Sequence record: LC727695.1
Strand: one strand, 5' to 3'
DNA length: 64,000 bases
The notes under the pieces were generated by a model. The model had not been told where the DNA came from. It saw only the letters and a list, made by a program, of their open reading frames with translations, and did no database searches. The position numbers and the translations under genes were made by a program. Positions 2,060 to 42,582 of the stretch are shown piece after piece; position 1 is the first letter of the stretch, and every line of letters starts with the position of its first letter.

Positions 2060-3715
2060 ATGAAGAAGGCATTAGTTCCTTTTAATATTTCTTTACTTAT
2101 TCCTACTAAAGAACAATTAAAGTTCTTAGGTCAAGTAAAGAGTCATGAGATATTTGAAGGTTTAGGTGGTAACTTTCATGAAGATGGTTTGTTCTCTGTT
2201 TCCATTTTTGGAAGAGTTGGATCAACTGATCGTGAGAGTTTATTTGGATATATCCATTTAGGTTTAGAACTTATCCATCCAGTTGTATATCGAAACTTAA
2301 TTAAATTAAAAGCTTTCTATGAAGAAATTATTCTTGGTAAGGCATTTGCAGTATTTGATGAATCTATTAAAGATTTTATCCGCGCTGATGAACTAACTGG
2401 TAAAACTGGTTATACATTCTTTTTTGATAACTGGAAACGAATTGACTTTGGGACCACTAAGTCAGGGATTCGGCTATCAAGGTTACAATTAATCGAAAAA
2501 TATAAAGATAACTGTATTTTTAAAGACATGATTGTAACACCTGCTGCTTATCGTGATGCAGAGATTGATGAGAATAATCGTGTTGAGATGGATGAGGTCA
2601 ATGAACATTATAGATATCTATTAAATCAGTCGTTTGGTGTACCTGACAGTTTTGGACCAAACGATGACTTGAGTATCTATGATCGCAAACGAGTAGCGAT
2701 GCAAAATACAGTATTAGCTATTTATGAACATTATGAAAGGTTATTAGCAGGTAGTAAACGAGGTTATATCCAATCTAAATGGGCATCCCGTCGTATTGCC
2801 AATGGTACCCGTAACGTCATTAGTTCGCTAGATACTAATGCGGCTGATCTTGATTCACCTAATCGACCAACATTCAAAGATGCTGTAGTTGGCTTACATC
2901 AAGCAGCTCGTTCTGTTGCACCACGTACAATCTTTGCACTAAGGCAAGGTGTAGTTGGTGAAGTGTTTGATACAGTTACTAACACTGTACAGCTCATCAA
3001 TAAGAAAACACTACGCTTAGAATGGGTTGATATCTCTAACGAAGATATGGATCTATGGGGAACTCCTGAAGGGCAAGAACAAATCATCAATGAGTTAGAT
3101 GTCATTGAAAAACGTTCACGTGCAATTGAAATTGCTGATCATTATCTAGCCCTTATTTACGTTGATGATAAACAGAATTTTAAAATATTCCGCAACATCG
3201 ATGAGTTACCTACTAATCTAAATAAGAAATTTGTTAGACCTATTACTTATGCCGAATTAGTTTACCTTAGTGGATTAAGTATGTGGCGAACAAACTCAGC
3301 GTTTGTTACACGATATCCTGTAGAAAACTACAATAGCTCTATCCCCTGTAAGATGTATGTTAAAACAACCGTAGTGGGTGAATTACGTTATCCGTTAAAT
3401 GATCAATGGGAACGTGGTGATACGTTGGAACCAGCCTTAGAATTCCCTGTGTTTGAATTAAATAAACCAGCCCAGTGGCATGACTCAGTATCCATCTCTC
3501 CTTCTATTCTCGCGCCATTGGGGGCGGATTTCGACGGGGACACTGTATCATTTAACGCAGTTTATTCAGAGGAAGCTATCGCTGAAACAGATGCTTTCTT
3601 TAAGAAACGTATTGCATATATACATGCCGATGGTCGACTGGCATTTAGTGTTGGTGTCCATACACTCAATTTAACTCTTCGGTACATGACTGGGGAACCC
3701 AAACAAAGGGATTAA
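2060..3715 (+). CDS. gp180: Virion RNA polymerase beta-prime subunit fragment carrying the catalytic motif
   Basis: 551 aa with LGADFDGDTVS (DxDGD Mg-binding motif), RxP-type TRYP motif and SRRIANGTRNVISS; AGGA RBS. Confidence 0.9.
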   Translation: MKKALVPFNISLLIPTKEQLKFLGQVKSHEIFEGLGGNFHEDGLFSVSIFGRVGSTDRESLFGYIHLGLELIHPVVYRNLIKLKAFYEEIILGKAFAVFDESIKDFIRADELTGKTGYTFFFDNWKRIDFGTTKSGIRLSRLQLIEKYKDNCIFKDMIVTPAAYRDAEIDENNRVEMDEVNEHYRYLLNQSFGVPDSFGPNDDLSIYDRKRVAMQNTVLAIYEHYERLLAGSKRGYIQSKWASRRIANGTRNVISSLDTNAADLDSPNRPTFKDAVVGLHQAARSVAPRTIFALRQGVVGEVFDTVTNTVQLINKKTLRLEWVDISNEDMDLWGTPEGQEQIINELDVIEKRSRAIEIADHYLALIYVDDKQNFKIFRNIDELPTNLNKKFVRPITYAELVYLSGLSMWRTNSAFVTRYPVENYNSSIPCKMYVKTTVVGELRYPLNDQWERGDTLEPALEFPVFELNKPAQWHDSVSISPSILAPLGADFDGDTVSFNAVYSEEAIAETDAFFKKRIAYIHADGRLAFSVGVHTLNLTLRYMTGEPKQRD

Positions 3716-3717
3716 TC

Positions 3718-6700
3718 ATGCGCTTAAATATTACACAGTTTCTGAAAAATTATAGTGTACGCGAATATGCTAAACTTCAGTCACCTAAGTTGCATGCTCT
3801 AAATAAACTTGATCTACCTTTCGAATCCATTTATCAGTTCTTCGATGGTAATAATGCAGTAATGGGTCCTAGTCAAACAGACCCATTATTCTCCAAACAT
3901 CAAGGTAAAGTATATATTGAGCATGTTACTGATATGCTTACATTTGAAGGTAATCCACGTAGGACTTCAAATATCCCAGCAACAATGATTCAAGAGTTTC
4001 GCCGCCAGAACCGTTTCTTTAAACCTTTACGCAGTGATACCGGTTTTAAATTATCAAACCAGAACATTCTGGTAATGAATTATAATTTAATTAACCCTCA
4101 ATGGAATTATATGGCTTCTTATAAAGCTACATGGTTCCGTTGGTCAAATGACATGCGTACATTCTGGAGTGGCGTAGCGGCTGCATGTGAACGTTTTCCT
4201 GGTTGGAACCAGTTCATTGATGTACACTTACCTGAGTTAGTTCCACCTCCTTCTTCTTTTAATAAACTACGAGGGGGTTTGACTCAAGATCTAGCTAATC
4301 AATTCAATACACCTGATATTCTAAATATATTTGATTTAGTTCGCTGGGTTTCTGATGATCGTGAAAGTTCTTTCATGAATGTCATCGATGCTAAGTATTA
4401 CGGTAACATTAATCTTTTATTCCGTGTACAAAGTTCATTCTTTGTTATTAACTTAGGGATGCTTGATCAATGGCGTCGTGATCCAGAAATTAAAGATGAT
4501 AAAGGTTATGATACCCAGCAAATAGCTAGGCGCCTTATTTCACTAGTATCAGCGATGGTTGAATATAACCAAGGTAATACTTCATTAATTAAAGAAGATA
4601 CGCCTATCTTTAATGAAGATATTATTGTTGATGAAGAAACTCCGGTTAGTTATGAAGAAGGTGAAGCAGAAGAGGTTGAGGATGTTGAGTCTAATAACGT
4701 TGAAGAAGAAGTAACTGAAGTTGATGTTATTGATGATGTTCAATTTGACCCAACCAACTTAACTAACTTAATTGATATTGGCGCAATTGAGGTAACATAT
4801 ACCCCACCACCAGAAAGTGATCTTGAGGTAACAAAGCTTATCATTGAAAAAGATCCACTGGAATCTTCACCTTCTCGCCAAATTAAAGAAGAGAAGGAAC
4901 TCATTGTAACAGATGTACCAGAAGATGAGTTATTCATCAATACTGAAGTTGATGAAGAAGATAAACTAATCGATGCCATTAGAGCTAAAGCATACGACAT
5001 GTATCGCGTGAATATGATTTCTGCGAATACATTCGAGCAAGCTCAAGAAGATTCGATTATGTATCGTCGTCTACCTGATCCATTTACCGATCCTAATGAT
5101 GAATCAGTAGAACCTATGACGATCGCTGAGGCGATGGAATATCATCCAGATGATCTTAAGATTCCAGAAGACACCACTTTTGAAGATAAGCCAACCATTG
5201 TTGATAAATCAATGTTGGGTAGTAAGTTAAAAGCCATCCAACGCAAATACAACAAGGTCTTATTAAAGAAAGATATTTTAAACAGTGTGTTATCTGTTCA
5301 GAAACAAGGCGTATCAGTAACTAATTACAAAATTGAAACTGTACGCGATTCTGGTAACCATTACCAAATCCACAAAGTTACATTAAAGCCTATTCGTGGT
5401 AGAAGTTCACAAGTAATGTTCCGTATCCCTGTCATTGATAATGACGGTAGGTTCATGTCTAATGGGGTAACATATCGCCAACGTTTACAACGTGCTGATA
5501 TTCCAATTCGTAAAGTTAATCCACGTAAAGTTGCATTGACCTCTTATTATAATAAGACCTTTGTGACCAGATCTGAACGTGCTGAAAACAACTTTGATAA
5601 TTGGTTAATCAGAGCGATTACCAACCGTGCATTAGATGGAAGTGATATGTCTGTACATTCAGTTACCTATGCTGAATTAGATCAATCCAACTATGTTCTA
5701 CCAAGGGTGTACACTACTTTAGGAACAGCTTTTAAAGGCTTCCATAATCACCGTAATGTGTTCTATTTTAATTTCAAAGATCGTAATGAATTCTTTGCAA
5801 AACAAGGATTACATATCGAAGATTATGAAACTGATGATTTGATAATGGTGGGGTTCAATGGCACTGATGCTATCTTGTTAGATAAGAATTCCATCTTTTA
5901 CATGAAAACAGGTAATGAGCTAGAACCTATTGGTACCATTACAGATATACTTGGCTTAGATCTAACCAAAGCGCCGTTAGAAGCTATTCTAATGTCAATT
6001 GGTGGTAAAGAGCTACCATTAGGTTTCATTTTAGCATATCACCATGGCTTAAACAATCTACTTAAGAAGTTGAATGTTAATTATCAGCGTCATCAGCGTG
6101 GCACCAGGATTGTTGTCAATAGTACGGATTATACATTAGCGTTCGCTGATGAGATCCTAGTATTTGATCGAGCTGATTATAAAGCAATGCTTGTATTAAG
6201 TGGACTCAAGCGTTATCATAAATCACTGCGGCGTTATTCTGTTTATGATTTCAATAAACGAGATGTTTACTTCAGGGTTCTTGAAGAAGCTGGATTAAGT
6301 AATAGATTTACACGTGATATTGATACACTCTTCTCAGCATGGGTCGATCCAATCACTGAGGGTCTACTCAAGGAGATGGGTGAACCAACTACTTTTGAAG
6401 GATTGCTTTATCGGTCTGTCGAGTTATTAACGAACGACTGGAGTCCAGCAGAAGTAGATGGTGCATATATGCGCTATCGTGGTTATGAGCGCATGGCAGG
6501 GGCTATTTTTAATGAACTCAATAGAGCGGTACGTGTATTTAATATGCGTAATGGTGGGTCAGTGCAAACTGTCGAGTTAGATCCACACGTGATCTGGCGC
6601 AAGATTGTACAAGATCCGACAGTAGCCACTATTGAAGATTCTAACCCCATTGCAAATATCCGTGAACAAGAAGCGATGACTTATCGTGGAGATGGTGGAC

Positions 6701-8073
6701 GCGGTCCAACTTCAATGGTTGCACGTACACGTATTTACGGTGAAGCGGATGTTGGTGTGGTTAGTGAATCAACTGTGGACTCAGGTGACGTTGGTGTTAT
6801 TGCTTACTTAGTACCTGATGCTAACTTTGTAAACATGCGTGGTGTTACGCGTATGTTTGATCCAAAGACAGATGGGCCAGCTAGACTACTCTCAACTAGT
6901 GCACTGCTTGGTGTTGCAACCGAACATGATGACCCTAAGCGAATTAACTTTATCTCAATTCAGCAGCAGCAAGGTATTTATGCTGATGGGTATACAGTTA
7001 CACCAGTTCGTACAGGCTATGAACAAATCATAGCCCAAAGGACTAGTTCTATCTTTGCTGTAGCAGCAGAACAAGATGGTGAGGTTGTAGCTATTGATGA
7101 ATATGGTATCCAAGTTAAATATGCCGATGGTAATGTATTTGGATATCAATTAGGTACAGTTCATGGCACAGCAGCTGGTGTTAACTATCCACACATTCTT
7201 GTTACCTCATTAAAGAAAGGTGATAAGTTTAAACGTGGAGATACTATCACATATAACAAACGTTATTTCTCTGAAGATAGGTATACGCCTGGGCAAGTAT
7301 TATGGAAAGCCGGTTGTATGGCTGTTGTAGCATTTGATGATAACCTTGACACTTTAGAAGACGGTTCAGTTATTTCTGAAGACCTAGCTAAAAGGTTAAA
7401 TACTCAAACAACTGCAATCAAGAATATCGATGTTAGGTTTGATCAGACTATTCGAGATATGGTGAAAGTTGGGGATCATGTCGACTTAAATTCAATTCTA
7501 TGTATAATTGAAGATCCTGAAACAGCTGCTCACTCACTATATGACGAGGCATCTATTGAGACATTACGCAAACTATCAGCATATTCGCCACGTGCTAAGC
7601 TCGTAGGTACAGTATCAAAGATTGAATGCTTCTATCATGGTGAAATAGACGATATGACACCAAGTTTACAAGCATTAGCTAATACGTCAGATAAACAACG
7701 CGCTGAACGAGCTAAATCATTGAAAGAACCTACTTTCACTGGACAAGTAGATGCTAACTATCGAGTGAAAGGACGAGCCTTAGAATATGACCACATGATT
7801 ATTCGAGTGTATATCGATCATGATATCCCATGTGGTGTTGGAGATAAAGGCGTAGTAGCTAACCAGATGAAAACGGTATTCTCCCGTGTAATGACTGGAC
7901 GTAATGAAACTGAAGATGGCCGTAATATTGATCTACTATTCGGTAATACATCGGTAGAAGAACGAATGGTTCTATCTCCTAAAATCATTGCTACAACAAC
8001 TGGTATCTTGTGGGCAGCTGGAAAACATCTTGTAGCTGTATATAGAGGAAACACTAATGCAAAAGCTAAGTAA
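3718..8073 (+). CDS. gp178: Virion RNA polymerase beta subunit, large N-terminal/middle part
   Basis: 1451 aa with beta motifs DTLEDGSVISE, VGDKGVVANQMK, DLLFG and HDDPKRINF; acidic insert at about residues 300-450. Confidence 0.9.
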   Translation: MRLNITQFLKNYSVREYAKLQSPKLHALNKLDLPFESIYQFFDGNNAVMGPSQTDPLFSKHQGKVYIEHVTDMLTFEGNPRRTSNIPATMIQEFRRQNRFFKPLRSDTGFKLSNQNILVMNYNLINPQWNYMASYKATWFRWSNDMRTFWSGVAAACERFPGWNQFIDVHLPELVPPPSSFNKLRGGLTQDLANQFNTPDILNIFDLVRWVSDDRESSFMNVIDAKYYGNINLLFRVQSSFFVINLGMLDQWRRDPEIKDDKGYDTQQIARRLISLVSAMVEYNQGNTSLIKEDTPIFNEDIIVDEETPVSYEEGEAEEVEDVESNNVEEEVTEVDVIDDVQFDPTNLTNLIDIGAIEVTYTPPPESDLEVTKLIIEKDPLESSPSRQIKEEKELIVTDVPEDELFINTEVDEEDKLIDAIRAKAYDMYRVNMISANTFEQAQEDSIMYRRLPDPFTDPNDESVEPMTIAEAMEYHPDDLKIPEDTTFEDKPTIVDKSMLGSKLKAIQRKYNKVLLKKDILNSVLSVQKQGVSVTNYKIETVRDSGNHYQIHKVTLKPIRGRSSQVMFRIPVIDNDGRFMSNGVTYRQRLQRADIPIRKVNPRKVALTSYYNKTFVTRSERAENNFDNWLIRAITNRALDGSDMSVHSVTYAELDQSNYVLPRVYTTLGTAFKGFHNHRNVFYFNFKDRNEFFAKQGLHIEDYETDDLIMVGFNGTDAILLDKNSIFYMKTGNELEPIGTITDILGLDLTKAPLEAILMSIGGKELPLGFILAYHHGLNNLLKKLNVNYQRHQRGTRIVVNSTDYTLAFADEILVFDRADYKAMLVLSGLKRYHKSLRRYSVYDFNKRDVYFRVLEEAGLSNRFTRDIDTLFSAWVDPITEGLLKEMGEPTTFEGLLYRSVELLTNDWSPAEVDGAYMRYRGYERMAGAIFNELNRAVRVFNMRNGGSVQTVELDPHVIWRKIVQDPTVATIEDSNPIANIREQEAMTYRGDGGRGPTSMVARTRIYGEADVGVVSESTVDSGDVGVIAYLVPDANFVNMRGVTRMFDPKTDGPARLLSTSALLGVATEHDDPKRINFISIQQQQGIYADGYTVTPVRTGYEQIIAQRTSSIFAVAAEQDGEVVAIDEYGIQVKYADGNVFGYQLGTVHGTAAGVNYPHILVTSLKKGDKFKRGDTITYNKRYFSEDRYTPGQVLWKAGCMAVVAFDDNLDTLEDGSVISEDLAKRLNTQTTAIKNIDVRFDQTIRDMVKVGDHVDLNSILCIIEDPETAAHSLYDEASIETLRKLSAYSPRAKLVGTVSKIECFYHGEIDDMTPSLQALANTSDKQRAERAKSLKEPTFTGQVDANYRVKGRALEYDHMIIRVYIDHDIPCGVGDKGVVANQMKTVFSRVMTGRNETEDGRNIDLLFGNTSVEERMVLSPKIIATTTGILWAAGKHLVAVYRGNTNAKAK

Positions 8074-29290: not shown

Positions 29291-29692
29291 ATGTCAAGAA
29301 AGTTCTTTCTAATACTCCTACCACTTATCAGTGGCTGTGTTTATACGCCACATGAGTACCACACGCACAACACGACTGTGGTCCAATATGAGCACTCCTC
29401 TTCTACAGATGATCATACATCTGTTGTTACAACTAAAGAAGAGGTAATACAAAAAGTTCTGCCTACACCTAAAAAATATAGTAAGGATACTAGTAAGAAG
29501 TGTATGGTTTTCGAACTACCAAGAAAGAAACCGGTACCGCCAACACCGATTATTACAGAGTTTATAGAAACTCCGGAACAAATCGATATCTTGTTGACTG
29601 ACTATATAAAAGAATTAAAGTCACATATTGTATCTGAGCGCGCTAAAATTGAGCAAGCATATGAAGAATGGCGTGCAAAGTGTGATGAGTAA
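29291..29692 (+). CDS. Lipoprotein, o-spanin-like architecture, 133 aa
   Basis: Signal peptide II MSRKFFLILLPLISG-C; Pro-rich stretch; C-terminal helix ending KCDE. Confidence 0.7.
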   Translation: MSRKFFLILLPLISGCVYTPHEYHTHNTTVVQYEHSSSTDDHTSVVTTKEEVIQKVLPTPKKYSKDTSKKCMVFELPRKKPVPPTPIITEFIETPEQIDILLTDYIKELKSHIVSERAKIEQAYEEWRAKCDE

Positions 29693-29747: not shown

Positions 29748-31196
29748 ATGTCAGACGGTATGGTTTTATACACTGACGGATCATTCCGACAGGGTAAAGC
29801 TGGTTGGGGTATTCATGGTTATACCTATGAAAATGTTGCAATGAAATCTAAAGCAGCCACCAAACAGCAACCAACAGCTAAGGGATACTTAGATGTAGGT
29901 GCAGATGAGACATGCACTGTTTTAAATTATATTGATGCATTTGGTAGTGTAACTAATAACCCTACTAATAATACAGGTGAGCTAACCGCTGCAATTGAGG
30001 CTTTCAAAATAGCTCATGAAGCAGATGCTCCTAGACTAACGATGCTCATGGATAGTGAATACGTTAGAAAAGGTATGACCGCATATTTACCCAAATGGAT
30101 TAAGTCTAATTGGATTAAATCAGACGGCACGCCGGTAGCAAACCAGGACCTATGGAAACAGATGGTCGAACTAAAAGCTAAATGGGAAGAAACTAATAAA
30201 CCATTAAGCATCCAATGGGTCCGTGGACATAACGGAGACATTGGTAATGAAAAAGCTGATGCTAACGCTAAGCTTGGTTCGGGACAGAATAATGATAAGC
30301 CAGTGATGGTTTCGGTTAAAGGCGAGGAAATTAACAAACTTAAAAAACAAGTTGTTAATCCACTTATCCTCGAAAGTAGGTTACTCTTCGCCATTAACTC
30401 TGGAGAAGAACCAGATGGGTTCTATTACACCTATAACTTAGGTCGTATGCATAACTATGGTCATAAACCAAAAGACACTGCTAAAGATAAATTAGCTAAA
30501 GCTGATTTAATTTTAGGGCGTCGTATCTCTGAAGCAACCTTCAGTGTATATAAGGCAAATGAACCAGATGAGTATCTCCAGTTACTAATTAATATGCATA
30601 CAGAAGCACTGGGTACTGAAAATCCAGAACTGGGTATCATCAATTTGGCAAACGCATATCGTGCAACCATTCGACAGAAAATTGAATCCATGGGGCTACC
30701 TGCTCTAGTCGTATGGAAAGATATCAATGTTTTGTCGACGCCAACAGATGAACTCATTAGTCGGACTCTTAATCCACCACGTATGGCAAATGATGCTGTA
30801 GCTACATTTAATGTTATGCGCAGTCGTCTTGAAGATTACTTGGCTGGTAAACTTGGAGAGTCGGTTGGTATTATTGATATTACCGAGCACTTCTTCGAGG
30901 AAGTCGCAAAGGGTAAGAAAGTTGGCTATCAACTACTTAAGACGATTACATCTAATACAGGCTTTGTAGAAGTTCCGATCACATTTAAAGATCGTAAGAT
31001 AAAATTAAAGCTTGTATTAAATATCGATATTCCAAGTAGAAACCAATTAGCTCGTATTGGAGCTAATAAAGTTAAAATGGAAATTCTTGTAGTAGCTGAA
31101 GGCCCATATTCTTATTCATATTCAATTGTGTTCGTGACGGATGATGGTTCAGCTATCTATCAATCACCCTATACACAATTTATTCTCCCAAAATAG
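29748..31196 (+). CDS. rnhA: Ribonuclease HI with a long C-terminal extension (gp155-like)
   Basis: YTDGS, NNTGEL, DSEYV, NQDLW and WVRGH..NEKAD motifs. Confidence 0.9.
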   Translation: MSDGMVLYTDGSFRQGKAGWGIHGYTYENVAMKSKAATKQQPTAKGYLDVGADETCTVLNYIDAFGSVTNNPTNNTGELTAAIEAFKIAHEADAPRLTMLMDSEYVRKGMTAYLPKWIKSNWIKSDGTPVANQDLWKQMVELKAKWEETNKPLSIQWVRGHNGDIGNEKADANAKLGSGQNNDKPVMVSVKGEEINKLKKQVVNPLILESRLLFAINSGEEPDGFYYTYNLGRMHNYGHKPKDTAKDKLAKADLILGRRISEATFSVYKANEPDEYLQLLINMHTEALGTENPELGIINLANAYRATIRQKIESMGLPALVVWKDINVLSTPTDELISRTLNPPRMANDAVATFNVMRSRLEDYLAGKLGESVGIIDITEHFFEEVAKGKKVGYQLLKTITSNTGFVEVPITFKDRKIKLKLVLNIDIPSRNQLARIGANKVKMEILVVAEGPYSYSYSIVFVTDDGSAIYQSPYTQFILPK

Positions 31197-31206
31197 TGGG
31201 TATTCC

Positions 31207-31626
31207 ATGAACCTTATTAGCAGATTCAAAAAGTCGGTTAAGAATGGTTTCAGGGCAATTTGGATTAAGCTCTGGGACTATGCTGATCCCGAACTAAAGC
31301 GGATGTGCGTCATGGCGTCACTGTACTCCGTTATAGTACAGTGTAAGACAAATGAGTGTGAAAAGATCTCTCATTTGAATTCTAACATGAAACTAGTACG
31401 CGATGAAGCTGCCTTACGACTCCCAATTCATTATGGGCCGTACGTATGGAAAGGCGTGATAGCAATCGATAAGATTGATAAAGCAGATCTAACCACTGAT
31501 CAATTTTTCATGAGGCTTATTCGTAAGACTCCGTGTTGGATGAAATATGCTGATGATGCAACTTTTTTAAAGGATTTGAAAACTCTCTTTAAATTAAGTT
31601 TACATGAGAAGTGTATTCCAAATTGA
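31207..31626 (+). CDS. Hypothetical protein, 139 aa
   Basis: Start MNLISRF at 31207, just after the RNase H stop. Confidence 0.65.
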   Translation: MNLISRFKKSVKNGFRAIWIKLWDYADPELKRMCVMASLYSVIVQCKTNECEKISHLNSNMKLVRDEAALRLPIHYGPYVWKGVIAIDKIDKADLTTDQFFMRLIRKTPCWMKYADDATFLKDLKTLFKLSLHEKCIPN

Positions 31627-36949: not shown

Positions 36950-39900
36950 TTAAATAACAGCACCTTTGGAAACTACCCAATTAGTACCGTCCCATAGGAG
37001 AGTAAGAATTGTTTTAGTATCGCCTAGGTCATCTACTATTAATGGAGTACCATTGTTCCACTGTAGCACTGCACTAGATAGTGTTGGCATAGCTACCTTA
37101 CCAAGTAGTACAAGAACAGCCGTTACCATACGATCAACAGGTCCATTCTCTAGTGTAATGGTTTGGTTAGCAGCAGTTTGAACCCTATAGCACTGTTGGT
37201 TAGCTGGTGTTAGAGTTAAAGCTGTACCAGTGAATGTACTTGATTTCAGACTATATACATCGAATGATTTATCTAGCTTCTTCCAAGTAATATTAGTACC
37301 AGTACGGCTACGTACCCAATCACCATCAGCGGTTACATCATTATTCGGACCTTGGAATAGAGTCCATGATTTAGCCGCAGCGTTACGTAGGAATAGTTGT
37401 CCACTAGTAGCATCAGCTTGATCAACTATAATAGTTACAGGTGTCCATTTAGAACCACTAGCTGTTTTCTCACGTACATAGTTAGTGCCATTAGCGCCTT
37501 CACTAGGTACTTCGCCAATAACTGCGGCTGGTACAGCTACCCATTCACCATTTTGCATACCCATTAGAGTATCATCGGTTTGCAGAGGTGCTACATCAAC
37601 CCAGTTACCAGCTACACGACCTTGAGGCTTAGTAGCTTGTGCAGTATCGCGTACTACATCTGAAGGAATTTCTGGGAATGTAATGGTAGCCCATTCAGTT
37701 TTACCACCTGCAATACCTTTACGAACGTATTGTGCATTGACAGTTGGATTAGGTACAGCATCAATAGCAGGTGTCGGTAGTTCAATAGCCGTCCATTCAA
37801 TAGCACCATCAGCTGTTGCTTTATGACGACCATAGAAAACACCAACCTCGGCATTTGGTACTTCATCAACAGGTAGTTCAGTCCAACCGAGTTTGTACCG
37901 AACCATTTTCTTATCGACATCTTCTGGATCAACTTCACTAACTGGAACTGACATTAGTTTGTAGAATACAACCCAGTTAGCATCTTTATACCAGACAGTG
38001 CCAGTTTTGTCGATACACCAGTCGCCACGGTTACCATCGATAGAGGTGGGTGCAGTTTGACCTTCAGGTAGAATTACCCAAGAGGATCCACGTTCACCTT
38101 TCTGACCGGTTTTACCAGGTATGCCTGGAACACCTTGTTTACCTTCAGGACCTTGTGGGCCTTCCGGACCCATAGCTAGGACACCTAGGCTTTCCCAAGT
38201 AAATGTACCTTCTGTATCAATACATACGAATACTTCTACTTGTCCTTCAGTGTTGGTGTGAATGGCAATACCTTTACCTACGTTATCAGCAGATGCAGCT
38301 GGTTTACCAGCATCATCACCAACGTAAATAATTAATAGCCCACCACCTTGTTTACCTTCAGGACCCTGAGGACCTTCAACGCCCTGAATACCTTGTTCAC
38401 CATTTAAGTCAATTGGGCCGATATAGCCATCAATCTCTTGACCTTGGTAAGTATAAAGCATCGGACCATTGTCGGTCTCAACCCAATACGAATCACCAGT
38501 AGTTAATTCAGGGTTAGTATCCTTCTTAGGTAATTGGGATACGTCGGTTAGAACACCTTTAATGTTTAAACCTTCACCCGGCTTACCTTGCGGACCTGCC
38601 ATGATACCAATACTAGTCCAGCTACTGCCGTCCATGTTAACAAATACTTCGCCCGTGGACTTAACAGCGTATGCTTTCCACTGATTCTCGGTAGTTGCTG
38701 TAGGAGGGGTATCTTCGGTTGTGTCAATTGCCGCGATGATCTGGATAGGTTCACCGACGGGACCCGGCTCGCCTTGTTTACCATCTGGCCCTTGCGGACC
38801 TTCGGGGCCTTCTTCACCTTTTGGTCCACGGTGTGTACCACTATTTACCCAATTACCATCTATCTTAACAAATAAGGTAGATGTGTCTTGTGTGAAGTAA
38901 GCTGCCTGATCAGGGGCATCTGCCGGTAGGGCTGCCTCATTGGCAACAGCACCAGTAATAACTACGTTCTTACCATGTAGACTGATTAACCATTCACCCT
39001 CAGTACCAGTGAACCCATTATCCAATGCTACTTGGAAAGCCGATTTACCTTGTGCCCCTGGCTCACCAGGTAGACCTTGATCACCGTCTTCACCTTTAGG
39101 ACCTTCAGGACCCTGAGGACCACGGAATGAACCCATGGCTGTCCATGAGATATCAACAGTCGGATCTTGGCCAGTCAGTACATAAACCGTATTGGTGGAA
39201 CGTACTGAAACACCTTGGTATTGTTCTACACCAGTGGTGGTTAATAGATCGTCAGCAGTTTCAACCGCTTTAACTACTTCTAAGTTACGACCTTGCGGAC
39301 CAGGTTCACCTTGCTTACCATCGGGACCCGGATCACCTGTGTTACCTGGTTTACCTTGTGGACCCTCAGGACCTTGGAAAGTACCTAGGTCTGACCATGC
39401 ACCTTTTACAAAGATGAATAGATGCCCTGGTTTACCAGCTTCCATAGTAACTAAGTATGCTTCTGATTCTTTAGCTACAGATGGATCAGGTAAATCAGCT
39501 GGAGATGGTAGTGAATCCTTAATGGTGAATGGCATTGCTGGTTCGCCCTGAGGACCTTCAGGACCAATATCACCATCTTCACCTTTAGGACCTTCGGGGC
39601 CCTCAGGTCCACGTTCACCCTGTGGTGTAACTGGGAACCAATCATAGTCATCAATAGTTGGATTCTCTGGCGGATTATTACCTGAGATAAGCATCCACGC
39701 CCAGAGTTGATTATTCCATGAATAAGCATCACCAGGTTTATTACTTTCAGTCTTAGGTAATTCTAAGTTATTAGGCCAACGACCACGGATAACTAGACCA
39801 GTACCATCTGGACCACGAAGTGAACCTGTTTCAACCCAACGACCTTTTACAGGGGGATCTTCATTACCTAGCGGTGATTCCCATACCCATAGCCGATCTT

Positions 39901-40213
39901 CAACGAACCAAGCATCACCGACATTATGCGTATCTAATGGTTTAATATCTTGTTCGAATGTTGCTAGATCAACATTAGCGATAATATTGATAGCTGGACC
40001 AACCGGACCAGGAGGACCTTGTTCGCCATCTTTACCTGGCGCACCATCTTCACCCTTTAATCCAGGTATAGTGACAGGATCAACGAAAGTGGTATTAAGA
40101 CCCACCCCGGTAGAAACCGGGATGTGTCCATTAACTACAGAAGTGGGTTCATCAATTGATGATACCCGTTTGGGGAGTTCCCCGTTTACATAATCTTCAA
40201 ATGCAGAAGCCAT
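36950..40213 (-). CDS. gp146: Collagen-like tail fibre protein, 1087 aa
   Basis: Many Gly-X-Y runs separated by globular modules; foldon-like repeats; C-terminal beta-sandwich ending LLWDGTNW. Confidence 0.8.
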
Positions 40214-42582
40214 TATACTACTTCCTCAAGTTCGATTTTCATCAGTCCAGTGGTATTGGATACAGCGTTTGCTGAGTCACAGTTATACCACTTATTGCCA
40301 TCCTTGATGGTGTAGGTGTCAACTTGATTTGCATCATCCGCCTTATAAGTGAAGTTTAAGCTACCAGTAGAACCTTTAGATAGGTTACTGCAACGTAGTT
40401 TACCAGTATTGGTTACTTCAGTACCAATATCAGTTTCACGGTTCGGCCAAGCAGCCACACTTAGAGTGCGGAATACAAATCCACCTAGTACATAAGTACC
40501 ACCATTTACACTATTAGCTTCAACACCAGCTAAACCTTTTAGAACCACACTGTTAAAATCGTAGGTTCCTTTAGGATCATCGTCATGTACTAGTAATGCA
40601 CGTGTCCATACCTTACCAGTGGCATCAGATTTCCAATCCTCAGTAGCCCACTTACCGCCAGGCGCATTCATGGCCGGAGCTGCACTTAGTTTCTGAGTAG
40701 AGGTTAAAGTAATGACATGACTTTGTACTTGGGTTCCAAAGTTACCACCTGAGCGAAGGCGAGCTGCTGGATAGGTAACCGTTGCAGTAGGAGCCGCATT
40801 TGCAATAGCTACAACAGTAGTAGCAGTAGCTATACTACCGTTAGCTGCACGTTTAGCAGTAATTAATAGGTTATTAGTGCTGTCGTTATAAGTACCTGAC
40901 TTATAAGTAACTACCTTAGCAATTTCTGCTTCATTTGCACTGGTTATAGTGAGCTGATCATTTGGTGAGGAATAAACCACACTATCAGCATTAGATACTG
41001 TATTGGCAACAGTAGCAGTTTCACCTACTTTAATAGCACTTTGACCAGACGGATAAGTTACTTGACCAATATTAACAACTGGGCGAAGATCGTTTAACTG
41101 CATGGTGTTAATTTTATCTTCGGAACCAGCATCACTGGAAGTAAACCATTCTGACCATGAACCAGTGGATTTCTGAACACGTACACGGAAACCATATGCC
41201 TTAGTAGTATTACCACGGTCAGCTACGTAAAGACCAGTAACCTCTAGTTCTTTAGTAGGTGCAACAGTACCACTACTTTCTTTCAGTGCACCAAAGTCAG
41301 CAATTTCGTATGCTACTATATTTTCATCAGTAACTACTTTAATTGCAACAAGGTCATCTTCTTTAAGTTCTGTTTGACCTAACGGATAACCGCCAGTAAA
41401 TACAGCACTAGTAATATTAGCGGGAGTATCGGCTAATACCTTAGTAGTGAATTTAGCCCCATCGGCGTGTTCTACAACAATATCAGCATAACCTTCAGTA
41501 GTGGGTGCACCAAGATCAATATCGGCAGTAGCAATCCACATAGGTGGATTAACGCCAGGAGTTACAACTGCATCTATGTTATTGATTTTAACACTAGGTA
41601 CATAACTAGAATGTCCAGTTATTGCATCAACGATAACTCGAACATTACTAGTAGTTGATAGGCATGACTGTACGCTGTGCCCATCGGGGGTACGCACAAT
41701 ACTACCTACGTTCTGACTGGGGTCAGTTGCTTGTACATCTTTGACGAATACACCGCCACTAATACCTTCATTTTTAGGAAGGTTCTTAAGATCAACGGTC
41801 GTTTCATCAACGCCTTCAACAATACGGATATTACCGTCATTCTTGAATGCAATGTAATCAGTTAAACTACCAATCTGGAATTCACCATTGTCATAAATAC
41901 GAATTTCAGACTCAGGTAATTCGGGTAATGCACCTTGCGTAGTGGGCGCAGAAGCGTTCTTTAGATAAGAATAACCTTCTGCTTCCATACGACCTTGTTC
42001 CATCATACGCTGAGGTATTTTATCACCAGCAGTTAAGTCGTCTTGATTTAGACGCTTATCAAACAGGAAAGCAAAGTTATGGAAAGCAGCGTTGGATGAT
42101 AATCCACCATTCTTGCCAGTTACACGCAGTACATCTTTAACTGTGTAACCTTGTTGATTTAAGAGCGACTGGAGTAGTTCAGCAGTCATGGTTGCATGCA
42201 GTGATGTTAACCATTCCTGTTCAGTACCTTGGAAACCGTTTTCCACAGCTACTTCATATGCACTCTTACCAGCATCACCTTTAAGGGATGCTATAAACTC
42301 TTCTTCAGTACCAACGAAACCTAGATCGACTGCGATTTGATAAGAAGATTTACCTTTAAGCGAATCAAGCCATTCGGTTTCAGTTCCCTGGAAACCATTT
42401 TTAACGGCAATCTCGTACGCACTAAGACCGGGTGCTCCAGTCTGTAGTTTTGACAGCAGAAACTTATAGTTATCGACTTGACCAGCTGCATCGGTATGAA
42501 TTAATTCAATATACTCGCTATCGTTAAGAATAGCTAGATCCGGCAGTTGACTGATCTTGCCTTTGTCTGTAACATTTGCCAT
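40213..42582 (-). CDS. Tail fibre/structural protein (gp145-like), 789 aa
   Basis: Three SAYE/Q-x-AV-x-x-GF-x-GTE-x-EW/F repeats; Ig-like beta-rich C-terminal half; TAATG coupling to the collagen fibre gene. Confidence 0.7.
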   Translation of the reverse strand: MANVTDKGKISQLPDLAILNDSEYIELIHTDAAGQVDNYKFLLSKLQTGAPGLSAYEIAVKNGFQGTETEWLDSLKGKSSYQIAVDLGFVGTEEEFIASLKGDAGKSAYEVAVENGFQGTEQEWLTSLHATMTAELLQSLLNQQGYTVKDVLRVTGKNGGLSSNAAFHNFAFLFDKRLNQDDLTAGDKIPQRMMEQGRMEAEGYSYLKNASAPTTQGALPELPESEIRIYDNGEFQIGSLTDYIAFKNDGNIRIVEGVDETTVDLKNLPKNEGISGGVFVKDVQATDPSQNVGSIVRTPDGHSVQSCLSTTSNVRVIVDAITGHSSYVPSVKINNIDAVVTPGVNPPMWIATADIDLGAPTTEGYADIVVEHADGAKFTTKVLADTPANITSAVFTGGYPLGQTELKEDDLVAIKVVTDENIVAYEIADFGALKESSGTVAPTKELEVTGLYVADRGNTTKAYGFRVRVQKSTGSWSEWFTSSDAGSEDKINTMQLNDLRPVVNIGQVTYPSGQSAIKVGETATVANTVSNADSVVYSSPNDQLTITSANEAEIAKVVTYKSGTYNDSTNNLLITAKRAANGSIATATTVVAIANAAPTATVTYPAARLRSGGNFGTQVQSHVITLTSTQKLSAAPAMNAPGGKWATEDWKSDATGKVWTRALLVHDDDPKGTYDFNSVVLKGLAGVEANSVNGGTYVLGGFVFRTLSVAAWPNRETDIGTEVTNTGKLRCSNLSKGSTGSLNFTYKADDANQVDTYTIKDGNKWYNCDSANAVSNTTGLMKIELEEVV

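What the first reader, a model, noticed from the sequence alone, without database searches (positions are those of the whole stretch)
3509..3541. Synonymous GC-rich patch exactly on the RNAP catalytic DFDGD motif
Seen: the codons CTC GCG CCA TTG GGG GCG GAT TTC GAC GGG GAC have G/C at 9 of 11 third positions, and 22 of the 31 nt at 3511-3541 are G/C. The surrounding AT-rich genes favour GGT, GCT and GAT. Knowledge (recall): phiKZ-like RNAP genes often carry group I introns with homing endonucleases, and these nucleases can be used against competing phages. Inference: the patch may be a recoded escape allele against a homing endonuclease that targets this invariant site, or a retained co-conversion or intron-pairing exon tract.
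Basis: partly seen in the sequence, partly recalled or inferred. Interest (0 to 1): 0.72.

Follow-up and report, generated by a model that had tools for sequence, protein, structure and literature searches.

The report
Empty intron homing site, foreign-coded
The GC-rich patch on the polymerase catalytic motif of this phiKZ-like phage is the unoccupied insertion site of a known mobile group I intron, and its odd codons look like a short exon tract that travelled with that intron, not an escape allele.

Summary
Codons 3509-3541 have G/C at 9 of 11 third positions, and this is the rarest-codon 11-codon stretch among 18,387 in the window.

The window is a phiKZ-like Pseudomonas phage, 100% identical to phage Brmt over this gene. 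The gene (2060-3715) is the uninterrupted ortholog of PHIKZ180, the N-terminal beta-prime piece of the virion RNA polymerase.

In phiKZ and 11 other Phikzvirus records the gene is split exactly at GAT|TTC (3529|3530). The insert is a group I intron that carries gp179, an I-HmuI-like HNH endonuclease. The other 35 records are intron-less, and 34 of them are identical to the window over 121 nt.

The AT-recoded variants sit mostly in intron-bearing genomes.

The patch breaks down into parts:
- **GCG GAT** is intron-linked; it pairs with the conserved guide sequence AGUCC.
- **TTC and the two GAC codons** are ancestral motif codons.
- **The two GGG codons** are shared with the two closest endonuclease relatives.

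The nearest gp179 relative (75% identity) sits in a GC-rich phage where these codons are common. My best reading is a retained co-conversion tract from intron transfer. I score interest as moderate.

The parts
2060..3715 (+). Uninterrupted gene for the N-terminal beta-prime-like subunit of the virion RNA polymerase (ortholog of PHIKZ180), 551 aa
   Evidence: phrog_2986 at E 5e-226. 100% identical to phage Brmt and 97.8% identical to phiKZ exon 1. The joined phiKZ exons give 551 aa, 549 of them identical.
3509..3541 (+). Rare-codon, GC-ending patch covering LAPLGADFDGD
   Evidence: 9 of 11 GC3. Rank 1 of 18,387 windows by codon rarity. Absent in other genera.
3529..3530 (.). Unoccupied intron insertion site, between GAT (Asp) and TTC (Phe)
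   Evidence: 12 of 47 Phikzvirus records are split here. The insert matches Rfam RF00028 at 92 and 88 bits. The metagenomic relative L056 has the same site.
3524..3529 (+). Exon bases GCGGAT. The last four (GGAU in RNA) pair with the intron guide sequence (P1) in occupied alleles.
   Evidence: AGUCC lies just 5' of P2 in all eight introns read there (OMKO1, L056, L162-L164, L167, L169; phiKZ). GAT occurs in 13 of 13 intron-bearing lineages and GAC in 21 of 21 intron-less non-Phikzvirus alleles.
3527..3541 (+). Codons of the catalytic DFDGD motif
   Evidence: Translation. Invariant in 14 homologs.
3718..8073 (+). Neighbouring gene, ortholog of PHIKZ178 (beta-like virion polymerase subunit). It holds the homolog of the PhiPA3 gp210 target near 6932. 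Given as context only.
   Evidence: phrog_3148. PMC11620839. There is no rare-codon patch at that site.

Best explanation
The patch is the empty homing site of the Phikzvirus virion-polymerase beta-prime group I intron, the one that in phiKZ carries the I-HmuI-like HNH endonuclease gp179. Its unusual codons are mostly an exon tract linked to that intron. T at -1 and G at -4 (GCG GAT) give the U.G and G-C pairs with the conserved guide sequence AGUCC. TTC and the two GAC codons are old motif codons that stand out only against this AT-rich genome. The remaining G-ending codons, including both GGG, are best read as a short stretch of donor exon copied in with the intron when it arrived from a GC-richer relative. 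The tract then stayed behind in genomes that no longer carry the intron, or it spread to them by recombination. Shown: the site, the intron, the endonuclease family, the census, the GAT association and the mismatch between the endonuclease and host-gene trees. Inferred: the donor origin of the tract, intron loss in this lineage, and that this allele is a cuttable target.
For: Exact site and intron. gp179 has HNH_3 and NUMOD1 domains, and its nearest solved structure is 1U3E, I-HmuI. The patch ranks first of 18,387 windows, and the next three rare-codon patches are unbroken in all 47-48 records, so the overlap with the insertion site is unlikely to be chance. No spike is seen in other genera. 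GAT occurs in all 13 D|F-type intron-bearing lineages, including hosts with GC3 of 0.6-0.8, while 21 of 21 intron-less alleles outside Phikzvirus have GAC (Fisher p 1e-9, ignoring shared ancestry). GCG sits at the preceding Ala in 7 of 9 such lineages but in only 3 of 21 intron-less ones. The shared rare codons between the window gene and intron-bearing L056 peak at codons 489-493, the highest value in the gene. The endonuclease in L165 is 75% identical to gp179 although the host genes are only 55% identical; L161 shows the reverse (52% and 68%). Exon 1 of L165 ends with the same three codons before the splice site, and in that gene GGG is 47% of Gly, GCG 31% of Ala and GAC 62% of Asp. OMKO1 shows co-conversion directly: a block about 15% divergent, roughly 420 nt long, ends at the insertion site.
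Against: No sequenced relative carries the whole 33-nt tract, and L165 matches only the last 9 nt upstream. Its exon 2 was not recovered because the contig ends. The L165 endonuclease gene is AT-richer than its host (0.42 against 0.57), so the direction of transfer is open. The four upstream codons CTC GCG CCA TTG are unique to Phikzvirus. Other intron-bearing lineages show no GC3 rise upstream. GAT is in any case the preferred Asp codon here (82%), so on its own it is a weak footprint. Whether the endonuclease cuts this allele was not tested. Long-read RNA data did not detect splicing of the phiKZ introns under the conditions used.
Confidence: 0.6

Rival explanations
1. Escape allele: synonymous recoding that makes this intron-less gene resistant to a homing endonuclease aimed at the motif.
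For: Endonucleases of this family do act as weapons between these phages (PMC11620839). Some third-position variation exists at the site.
Against: The allele equals the joined exons of phiKZ, LC and Wadjak1/2, which carry the endonuclease. By the usual definition that makes it the cognate target. 34 of 35 intron-less records are identical, so there is no diversification. The variants run GC to AT and lie mainly in intron-bearing genomes (PhiPizzaParty, the T2P group, OMKO1).
Confidence: 0.04
2. Selection unrelated to the intron: rare or C/G-ending codons kept at the catalytic motif for decoding accuracy, ribosome pausing or a local mRNA hairpin.
For: TTC and GAC are shared with most homologs. 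A small hairpin is predicted.
Against: Apart from L055 (8 of 11, P 0.031), the homologs from other genera show no GC3 excess at these codons. The fold is not significant (z -1.78; 8 of 200 shuffles fold as well). The paralogous motif in phiKZ gp55 is AT-coded. No promoter or terminator signal lies in the patch.
Confidence: 0.08
3. Chance: drift produced one extreme codon cluster, and introns independently favour conserved motifs.
For: About 7 clusters reach 9 of 11 GC3 in 57 kb of coding sequence. Three of the nine G/C third positions are ancestral.
Against: The top-ranked window of 18,387 falls exactly on the only polymorphic intron site found in this stretch, and the three control patches do not. 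Rare codons shared with L056 and L165 cluster at the junction.
Confidence: 0.15
4. GC-biased repair: repeated endonuclease-triggered recombination at this site drove third positions towards G/C.
For: The site is a recombination junction. L056 has a mild rise using different codons (6 of 11, P 0.065).
Against: Twelve other intron-bearing lineages show no upstream rise relative to their own baseline. The gp55/gp56 intron site in phiKZ has none. Within the genus the observed changes run towards A/T.
Confidence: 0.08

Closest known systems
phiKZ gp179 intron in PHIKZ180 (predicted by Mesyanzhinov 2002 as cited in 10.1101/2023.10.13.562163; gp179 called an intron-encoded homing endonuclease and shown to be deletable in 10.1101/2025.11.23.690004)
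   Same: Same gene, same position and the same flanking exon bases. The window holds the allele without the insert.
   Different: The window has no intron and no endonuclease gene; no Rfam intron hit occurs anywhere in its 64 kb. I found no description of the codon oddity of the site in the papers I read.
Co-conversion tracts of the angiosperm mitochondrial cox1 group I intron (PMC3192709)
   Same: A short run of third-position synonymous differences lies right next to the insertion site, and it can persist after intron loss.
   Different: In cox1 the tract lies 3' only and donors are often identifiable. Here it spans both sides (-21 to +12), no full donor is known, and the hosts are phages.
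I-HmuI and I-HmuII of Bacillus phages SPO1 and SP82 (PDB 1U3E; PMC3428280)
   Same: Nearest solved relative of gp179 (E 5.5e-8). It is an HNH enzyme inside a group I intron in a polymerase gene.
   Different: I-HmuI nicks the template strand 3 nt downstream of the site and cuts both intron-plus and intron-less DNA. Whether gp179 does so is unknown. gp179 has about 115 extra N-terminal residues.
PhiPA3 gp210 acting on phiKZ gp178 (PMC11620839)
   Same: An intron-borne HNH endonuclease in a jumbo-phage virion polymerase gene that targets catalytic Asp codons of a competitor.
   Different: A different gene (the beta-like subunit, 3718-8073 here) and a different site. That site in the window is not a rare-codon patch.

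Membership tests
Unoccupied homing site of a mobile group I intron | Orthologous alleles are interrupted at exactly this position by a group I intron | tested here: met
   12 of 47 records are split at 3529|3530. Rfam RF00028 scores 92, 88 and 74 bits. Compensatory changes in a 3' hairpin are visible in the alignment.
Unoccupied homing site of a mobile group I intron | The intron encodes a homing endonuclease | tested here: met
   gp179 has HNH_3 (E 7e-9) and a sub-threshold NUMOD1 match. Its best PDB match is 1U3E, I-HmuI. Orthologs at 41-75% identity lie in five other introns at the same site (L056, L161, L164, L165, L169); L167 holds a more distant relative (32%).
Unoccupied homing site of a mobile group I intron | The joined flanking exons equal the uninterrupted allele and restore the reading frame | tested here: met
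   A 550-551 aa ORF with GADFDGD results in all 8 intron-bearing phages. The intron opens with a stop codon.
Unoccupied homing site of a mobile group I intron | The endonuclease cleaves the intron-less allele at or near the site | not testable with these tools
   No biochemical data for gp179 turned up in the papers searched.
Retained co-conversion tract (footprint) | A cluster of synonymous differences abuts the insertion site, relative to never-invaded relatives | tested here: met
   Compared with the sister genus Pawinskivirus, 7-8 of 11 codons differ, with 5 of the 7 third-position changes towards G/C (my count from the codon table). The patch ranks first in the window.
Retained co-conversion tract (footprint) | The tract matches a donor lineage | tested here: inconclusive
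   L165 shares only 9 nt, but its codon usage fits the tract. L056 shares GCG GAT and GAC GGG. No full match was found.
Retained co-conversion tract (footprint) | The tract is present in intron-less genomes that sit among intron-bearing ones | tested here: met
   34 of 35 intron-less records carry it. LC (with intron) and KTN4 (without) are identical across -250 to +400.
Endonuclease-escape (recoded resistant) allele | The sequence differs from the exon flanks of the endonuclease-bearing relatives | tested here: not met
   It is identical to phiKZ, LC, Wadjak1 and Wadjak2.
Exon tract kept for pairing with the intron (P1/P10) | Complementarity to the internal guide sequence across the tract | tested here: not met
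   Only -4 to -1 pair with AGUCC. P10 is 2 bp. The rest of the patch has no conserved partner.
Multisubunit RNA polymerase beta-prime catalytic loop | An invariant DFDGD motif in a beta-prime-like protein | tested here: met
   The motif is invariant in 14 homologs and the protein matches PHROG 'RNA polymerase beta subunit'. There was no Pfam hit and no PDB sequence hit.

The most novel reading that the evidence does not exclude
The GC-coded form would be the sequence read by the gp179-type nickase. The AT-recoded first codons of exon 2 are seen with the 98%-type intron in PhiPizzaParty and T2P (inferred for U1B, U5 and phi9_PA9 from identical match statistics), and once in intron-less KEN51. 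These would be immunity or resistance variants in an ongoing contest between two intron/endonuclease alleles, as between I-HmuI and I-HmuII in SPO1 and SP82. The window's phage would then be a susceptible target carrying the ancestral site.
Probability: 0.2. Interest if true: 0.7.

Novelty: new member of a known kind. Interest (0 to 1): 0.45.

Why it matters
It turns an odd codon cluster into a readable record of mobile-intron traffic at the catalytic centre of a jumbo-phage polymerase.

It also shows that interruptions at this motif are common in the family. Of the best 120 homolog clusters, 34 are cut there; a group I intron was confirmed by Rfam, or by visible core motifs and a restored frame, in the few read in full.

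The endonuclease has moved between GC-rich and AT-rich lineages. A single base, T at -1, separates every intron-bearing lineage from every intron-less one outside Phikzvirus.

For phiKZ-like phages, which are used as models and in therapy work, the census marks which genomes carry the empty site and which carry the intron. This bears on competition between co-infecting phages.

The mechanism itself is known biology.

Tried and rejected
- **Exact-word scans.** I scanned for intron 3' and guide-region words in viral contigs and genome contigs. Every hit was a chance match. IMG/VR held only 5 homologs, none with the intron.
- **Long exon-intron pairing.** A 9-bp pairing between exon -18..-10 and the intron 3' region appeared in the OMKO1 minimum-energy fold. 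I rejected it: by my estimate a match of that length is about what chance gives, and I did not see it in the L056 sequence.
- **P10 pairing with exon 2.** Only 2 bp form.
- **Local RNA structure, promoter or terminator.** Nothing significant was found.
- **Shared target with the paralogous phiKZ gp55/gp56 intron.** That intron sits 6 nt upstream (N|ADFDGD) and has AT-coded flanks.
- **Rare-codon patch at the gp210 target homolog in the next gene.** There is none.
- **Solved-structure search with the polymerase subunit.** No hit.
- **Exon 2 of most metagenomic intron-bearing alleles.** It could not be read because the contigs end inside the intron.

Full report
**What the window is**

The window comes from a phiKZ-like Pseudomonas jumbo phage. 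ORF 2060-3715 is 100% identical to phage Brmt, 99.8% to PA7 and 97.8% to phiKZ. It matches PHROG 2986, 'RNA polymerase beta subunit', at E 5e-226, and is the ortholog of PHIKZ180. The next gene, 3718-8073, is the PHIKZ178 ortholog. Pfam and PDB sequence searches gave nothing for the subunit.

**Checking the observation**

The quoted codons are in frame and encode LAPLGADFDGD.
- 9 of 11 third positions are G/C, against a gene GC3 of 0.256.
- 22 of 31 nt at 3511-3541 are G/C.
- Over 54 ORFs, 13 of 18,387 windows (about 7 clusters) reach 9 of 11.
- By synonymous-codon rarity this window is the single most extreme.
- 17 homologs from other genera show no excess at these codons, and L055 is only mildly raised (P 0.031).

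**What lies at the site in relatives**

In phiKZ the gene stops after GAT. A 1,443-nt insert follows, and the reading frame resumes at TTC.
- The insert is a group I intron (RF00028, 92 bits).
- It carries PHIKZ179, which has an HNH_3 domain and a sub-threshold NUMOD1 match. Its nearest solved structure is I-HmuI, 1U3E.
- OMKO1 and fMGyn-Pae01 carry a 481-nt version in which the endonuclease gene is reduced to remnants by one large deletion.
- Joining the predicted exons as they stand gives a 550-551 aa ORF with the motif in all eight intron-bearing phages examined. The intron opens with a stop codon.

A census of the 47 Phikzvirus records shows 12 split at 3529|3530 and 35 uninterrupted. Of the uninterrupted ones, 34 are identical to the window over 3470-3590, and KEN51 has one change. 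The window itself has no group I intron.

The gp179 intron is already in the literature.

**The escape-allele test**

phiKZ, LC, Wadjak1 and Wadjak2 all carry the endonuclease, and their flanking exon codons are exactly those of the window. The variants that exist run towards A/T and lie mostly in intron-bearing genomes:
- the first three codons of exon 2 in PhiPizzaParty;
- two of those codons plus one upstream codon in T2P (U1B, U5 and phi9_PA9 show identical match statistics but were not read);
- four codons in OMKO1 and fMGyn-Pae01.

**Recombination at the site**

OMKO1 is about 15% divergent from the window over roughly the last 420 nt of exon 1. It is about 1.6% divergent from the first bases of exon 2 onward, so the junction lies at the insertion site. 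PhiPizzaParty is nearly identical to the window, with only 7 mismatches across the roughly 2.97 kb compared. Three of those seven fall within the first 9 nt of exon 2. These are the patterns expected from exon co-conversion during intron transfer (PMC3192709).

**Pairing with the intron**

The sequence AGUCC lies just 5' of the P2 hairpin in all eight introns read there: OMKO1, L056, L162, L163, L164, L167 and L169 and phiKZ. It pairs with exon GGAU and the first intron base. In phiKZ the endonuclease ORF lies between the 5' splice site and this guide sequence. This accounts for T at -1 and G at -4 and for nothing else. P10 is only 2 bp.

**The wider family**

Among the best 120 homolog clusters, 34 are cut at the motif: 28 right after the first Asp and 6 after Phe. 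I fetched 12 of their contigs and also had L056 and L057 from metagenomes.
- All 13 lineages with the Asp|Phe insertion use GAT, even where host GC3 is 0.6-0.8.
- All 21 intron-less alleles outside Phikzvirus use GAC. Fisher p is 1e-9 and ignores relatedness.
- GCG precedes the Asp codon in 7 of 9 Ala-type intron-bearing lineages, against 3 of 21 intron-less alleles, all three in one genus.
- The upstream GC3 rise is not general.
- L056 has a host gene 56% identical and an endonuclease 61% identical. It shares GCG GAT and GAC GGG with the window, and that cluster of shared rare codons is the highest in the gene.

**Origin of the remaining codons**

The closest relative of gp179 (75% identity) lies in L165. 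Its host gene is only 55% identical, with an exon GC of 0.57. L161 has a 68%-identical host gene but a 52%-identical endonuclease. The endonuclease tree therefore disagrees with the host-gene tree, which indicates horizontal transfer.

Exon 1 of L165 ends with the same three codons as the window. In that gene the codons that are rare in the window are common: GGG is 47% of Gly, GCG 31% of Ala, GAC 62% of Asp and TTG 22% of Leu.

I therefore read the patch as three layers:
- old TTC and GAC motif codons;
- the P1-linked GCG GAT;
- a short donor-type tract brought in with the intron.

The direction of transfer and the true donor are not established. No relative carries the whole tract, and the four upstream codons remain unexplained.

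**Controls and rivals**

The next three rare-codon patches (near 29351, 31297 and 44927) are unbroken in all 47-48 records. That argues against a chance overlap. The patch RNA does not fold significantly, and no promoter or terminator pattern falls in it. The paralogous intron in phiKZ gp55/gp56 sits 6 nt upstream in the equivalent motif and has AT-coded flanks. The gp210 target homolog in the next gene is not a rare-codon patch.

I stopped once I noticed it. None of those letters entered a tool call, a script, a note or a conclusion.

Predicted exons were joined only inside scripts, to test the splice model. One joined translation, of L056, was written to a scratch file for an alignment.

**Verdict**

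The escape reading is rejected, and the co-conversion-tract reading is favoured at about 0.6. This is a new example of a known kind of footprint at a known intron site, and it comes with a useful comparative picture of introns at this motif.

Noticed in passing
L030:6460-6541 compared with L001:5830-5913: The last ~100 nt of the phiKZ gp56 intron (in the non-virion beta-prime gene) and of the gp179 intron are almost identical, whereas their cores are only about 70-80% alike and their endonucleases 30% identical. This suggests sequence exchange between the two introns within one genome.
   Followed up: partly
L002:2968-3448 (OMKO1) and L015 (fMGyn-Pae01): A 481-nt version of the intron in which the endonuclease gene is reduced to remnants by one large deletion. 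It comes with an exon-1 block of roughly 420 nt, about 15% divergent, that ends at the insertion site. This implies an unsampled divergent phiKZ-like donor lineage.
   Followed up: partly
L057:1515-2005 (Ga0114983_1004185): A 491-nt ORF-less insert lies 2 nt further downstream (after TT of the Phe codon) in a GC-rich relative. It was not called by Rfam at the gathering score, but its core motifs are visible, and six protein clusters end after DF. At least three distinct insertion points therefore exist in or next to DFDGD across the two beta-prime paralogs.
   Followed up: partly
Literature: 10.1101/2023.10.13.562163: Long-read transcriptomics reported no evidence of splicing of the phiKZ gp56, gp72 and gp179 introns. 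Yet without splicing the virion subunit would lack most of the catalytic motif. This is unresolved.
   Followed up: no
Records 124.01, 2PS, 6B, 9-Ps-8B and others: Several phages that lack the intron at this site carry a ribozyme core 85% identical to its 3' 300 nt elsewhere in the genome, about 136 kb away. It is probably in the non-virion polymerase genes.
   Followed up: no
window 36950-42582 (- strand): The local GC rise to 0.47 comes from a collagen-like, Gly-rich tail-fibre gene (phrog_3904) next to a gene that matches the PHROG 'tail sheath' family (phrog_15433). Their GC3 is ordinary (0.26).
   Followed up: yes
window 31141-31626 (+): This small ORF (phrog_9853, function unknown) has GC3 of 0.42, the highest in the window. 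It overlaps the upstream gene by 55 nt and holds the second or third most extreme rare-codon cluster. It is unbroken in all 47 relatives.
   Followed up: partly
window 6922-6942: The homolog of the PhiPA3 gp210 target (the Asp-Asp codons of the gp178 ortholog) is present and uninterrupted in this phage.
   Followed up: partly
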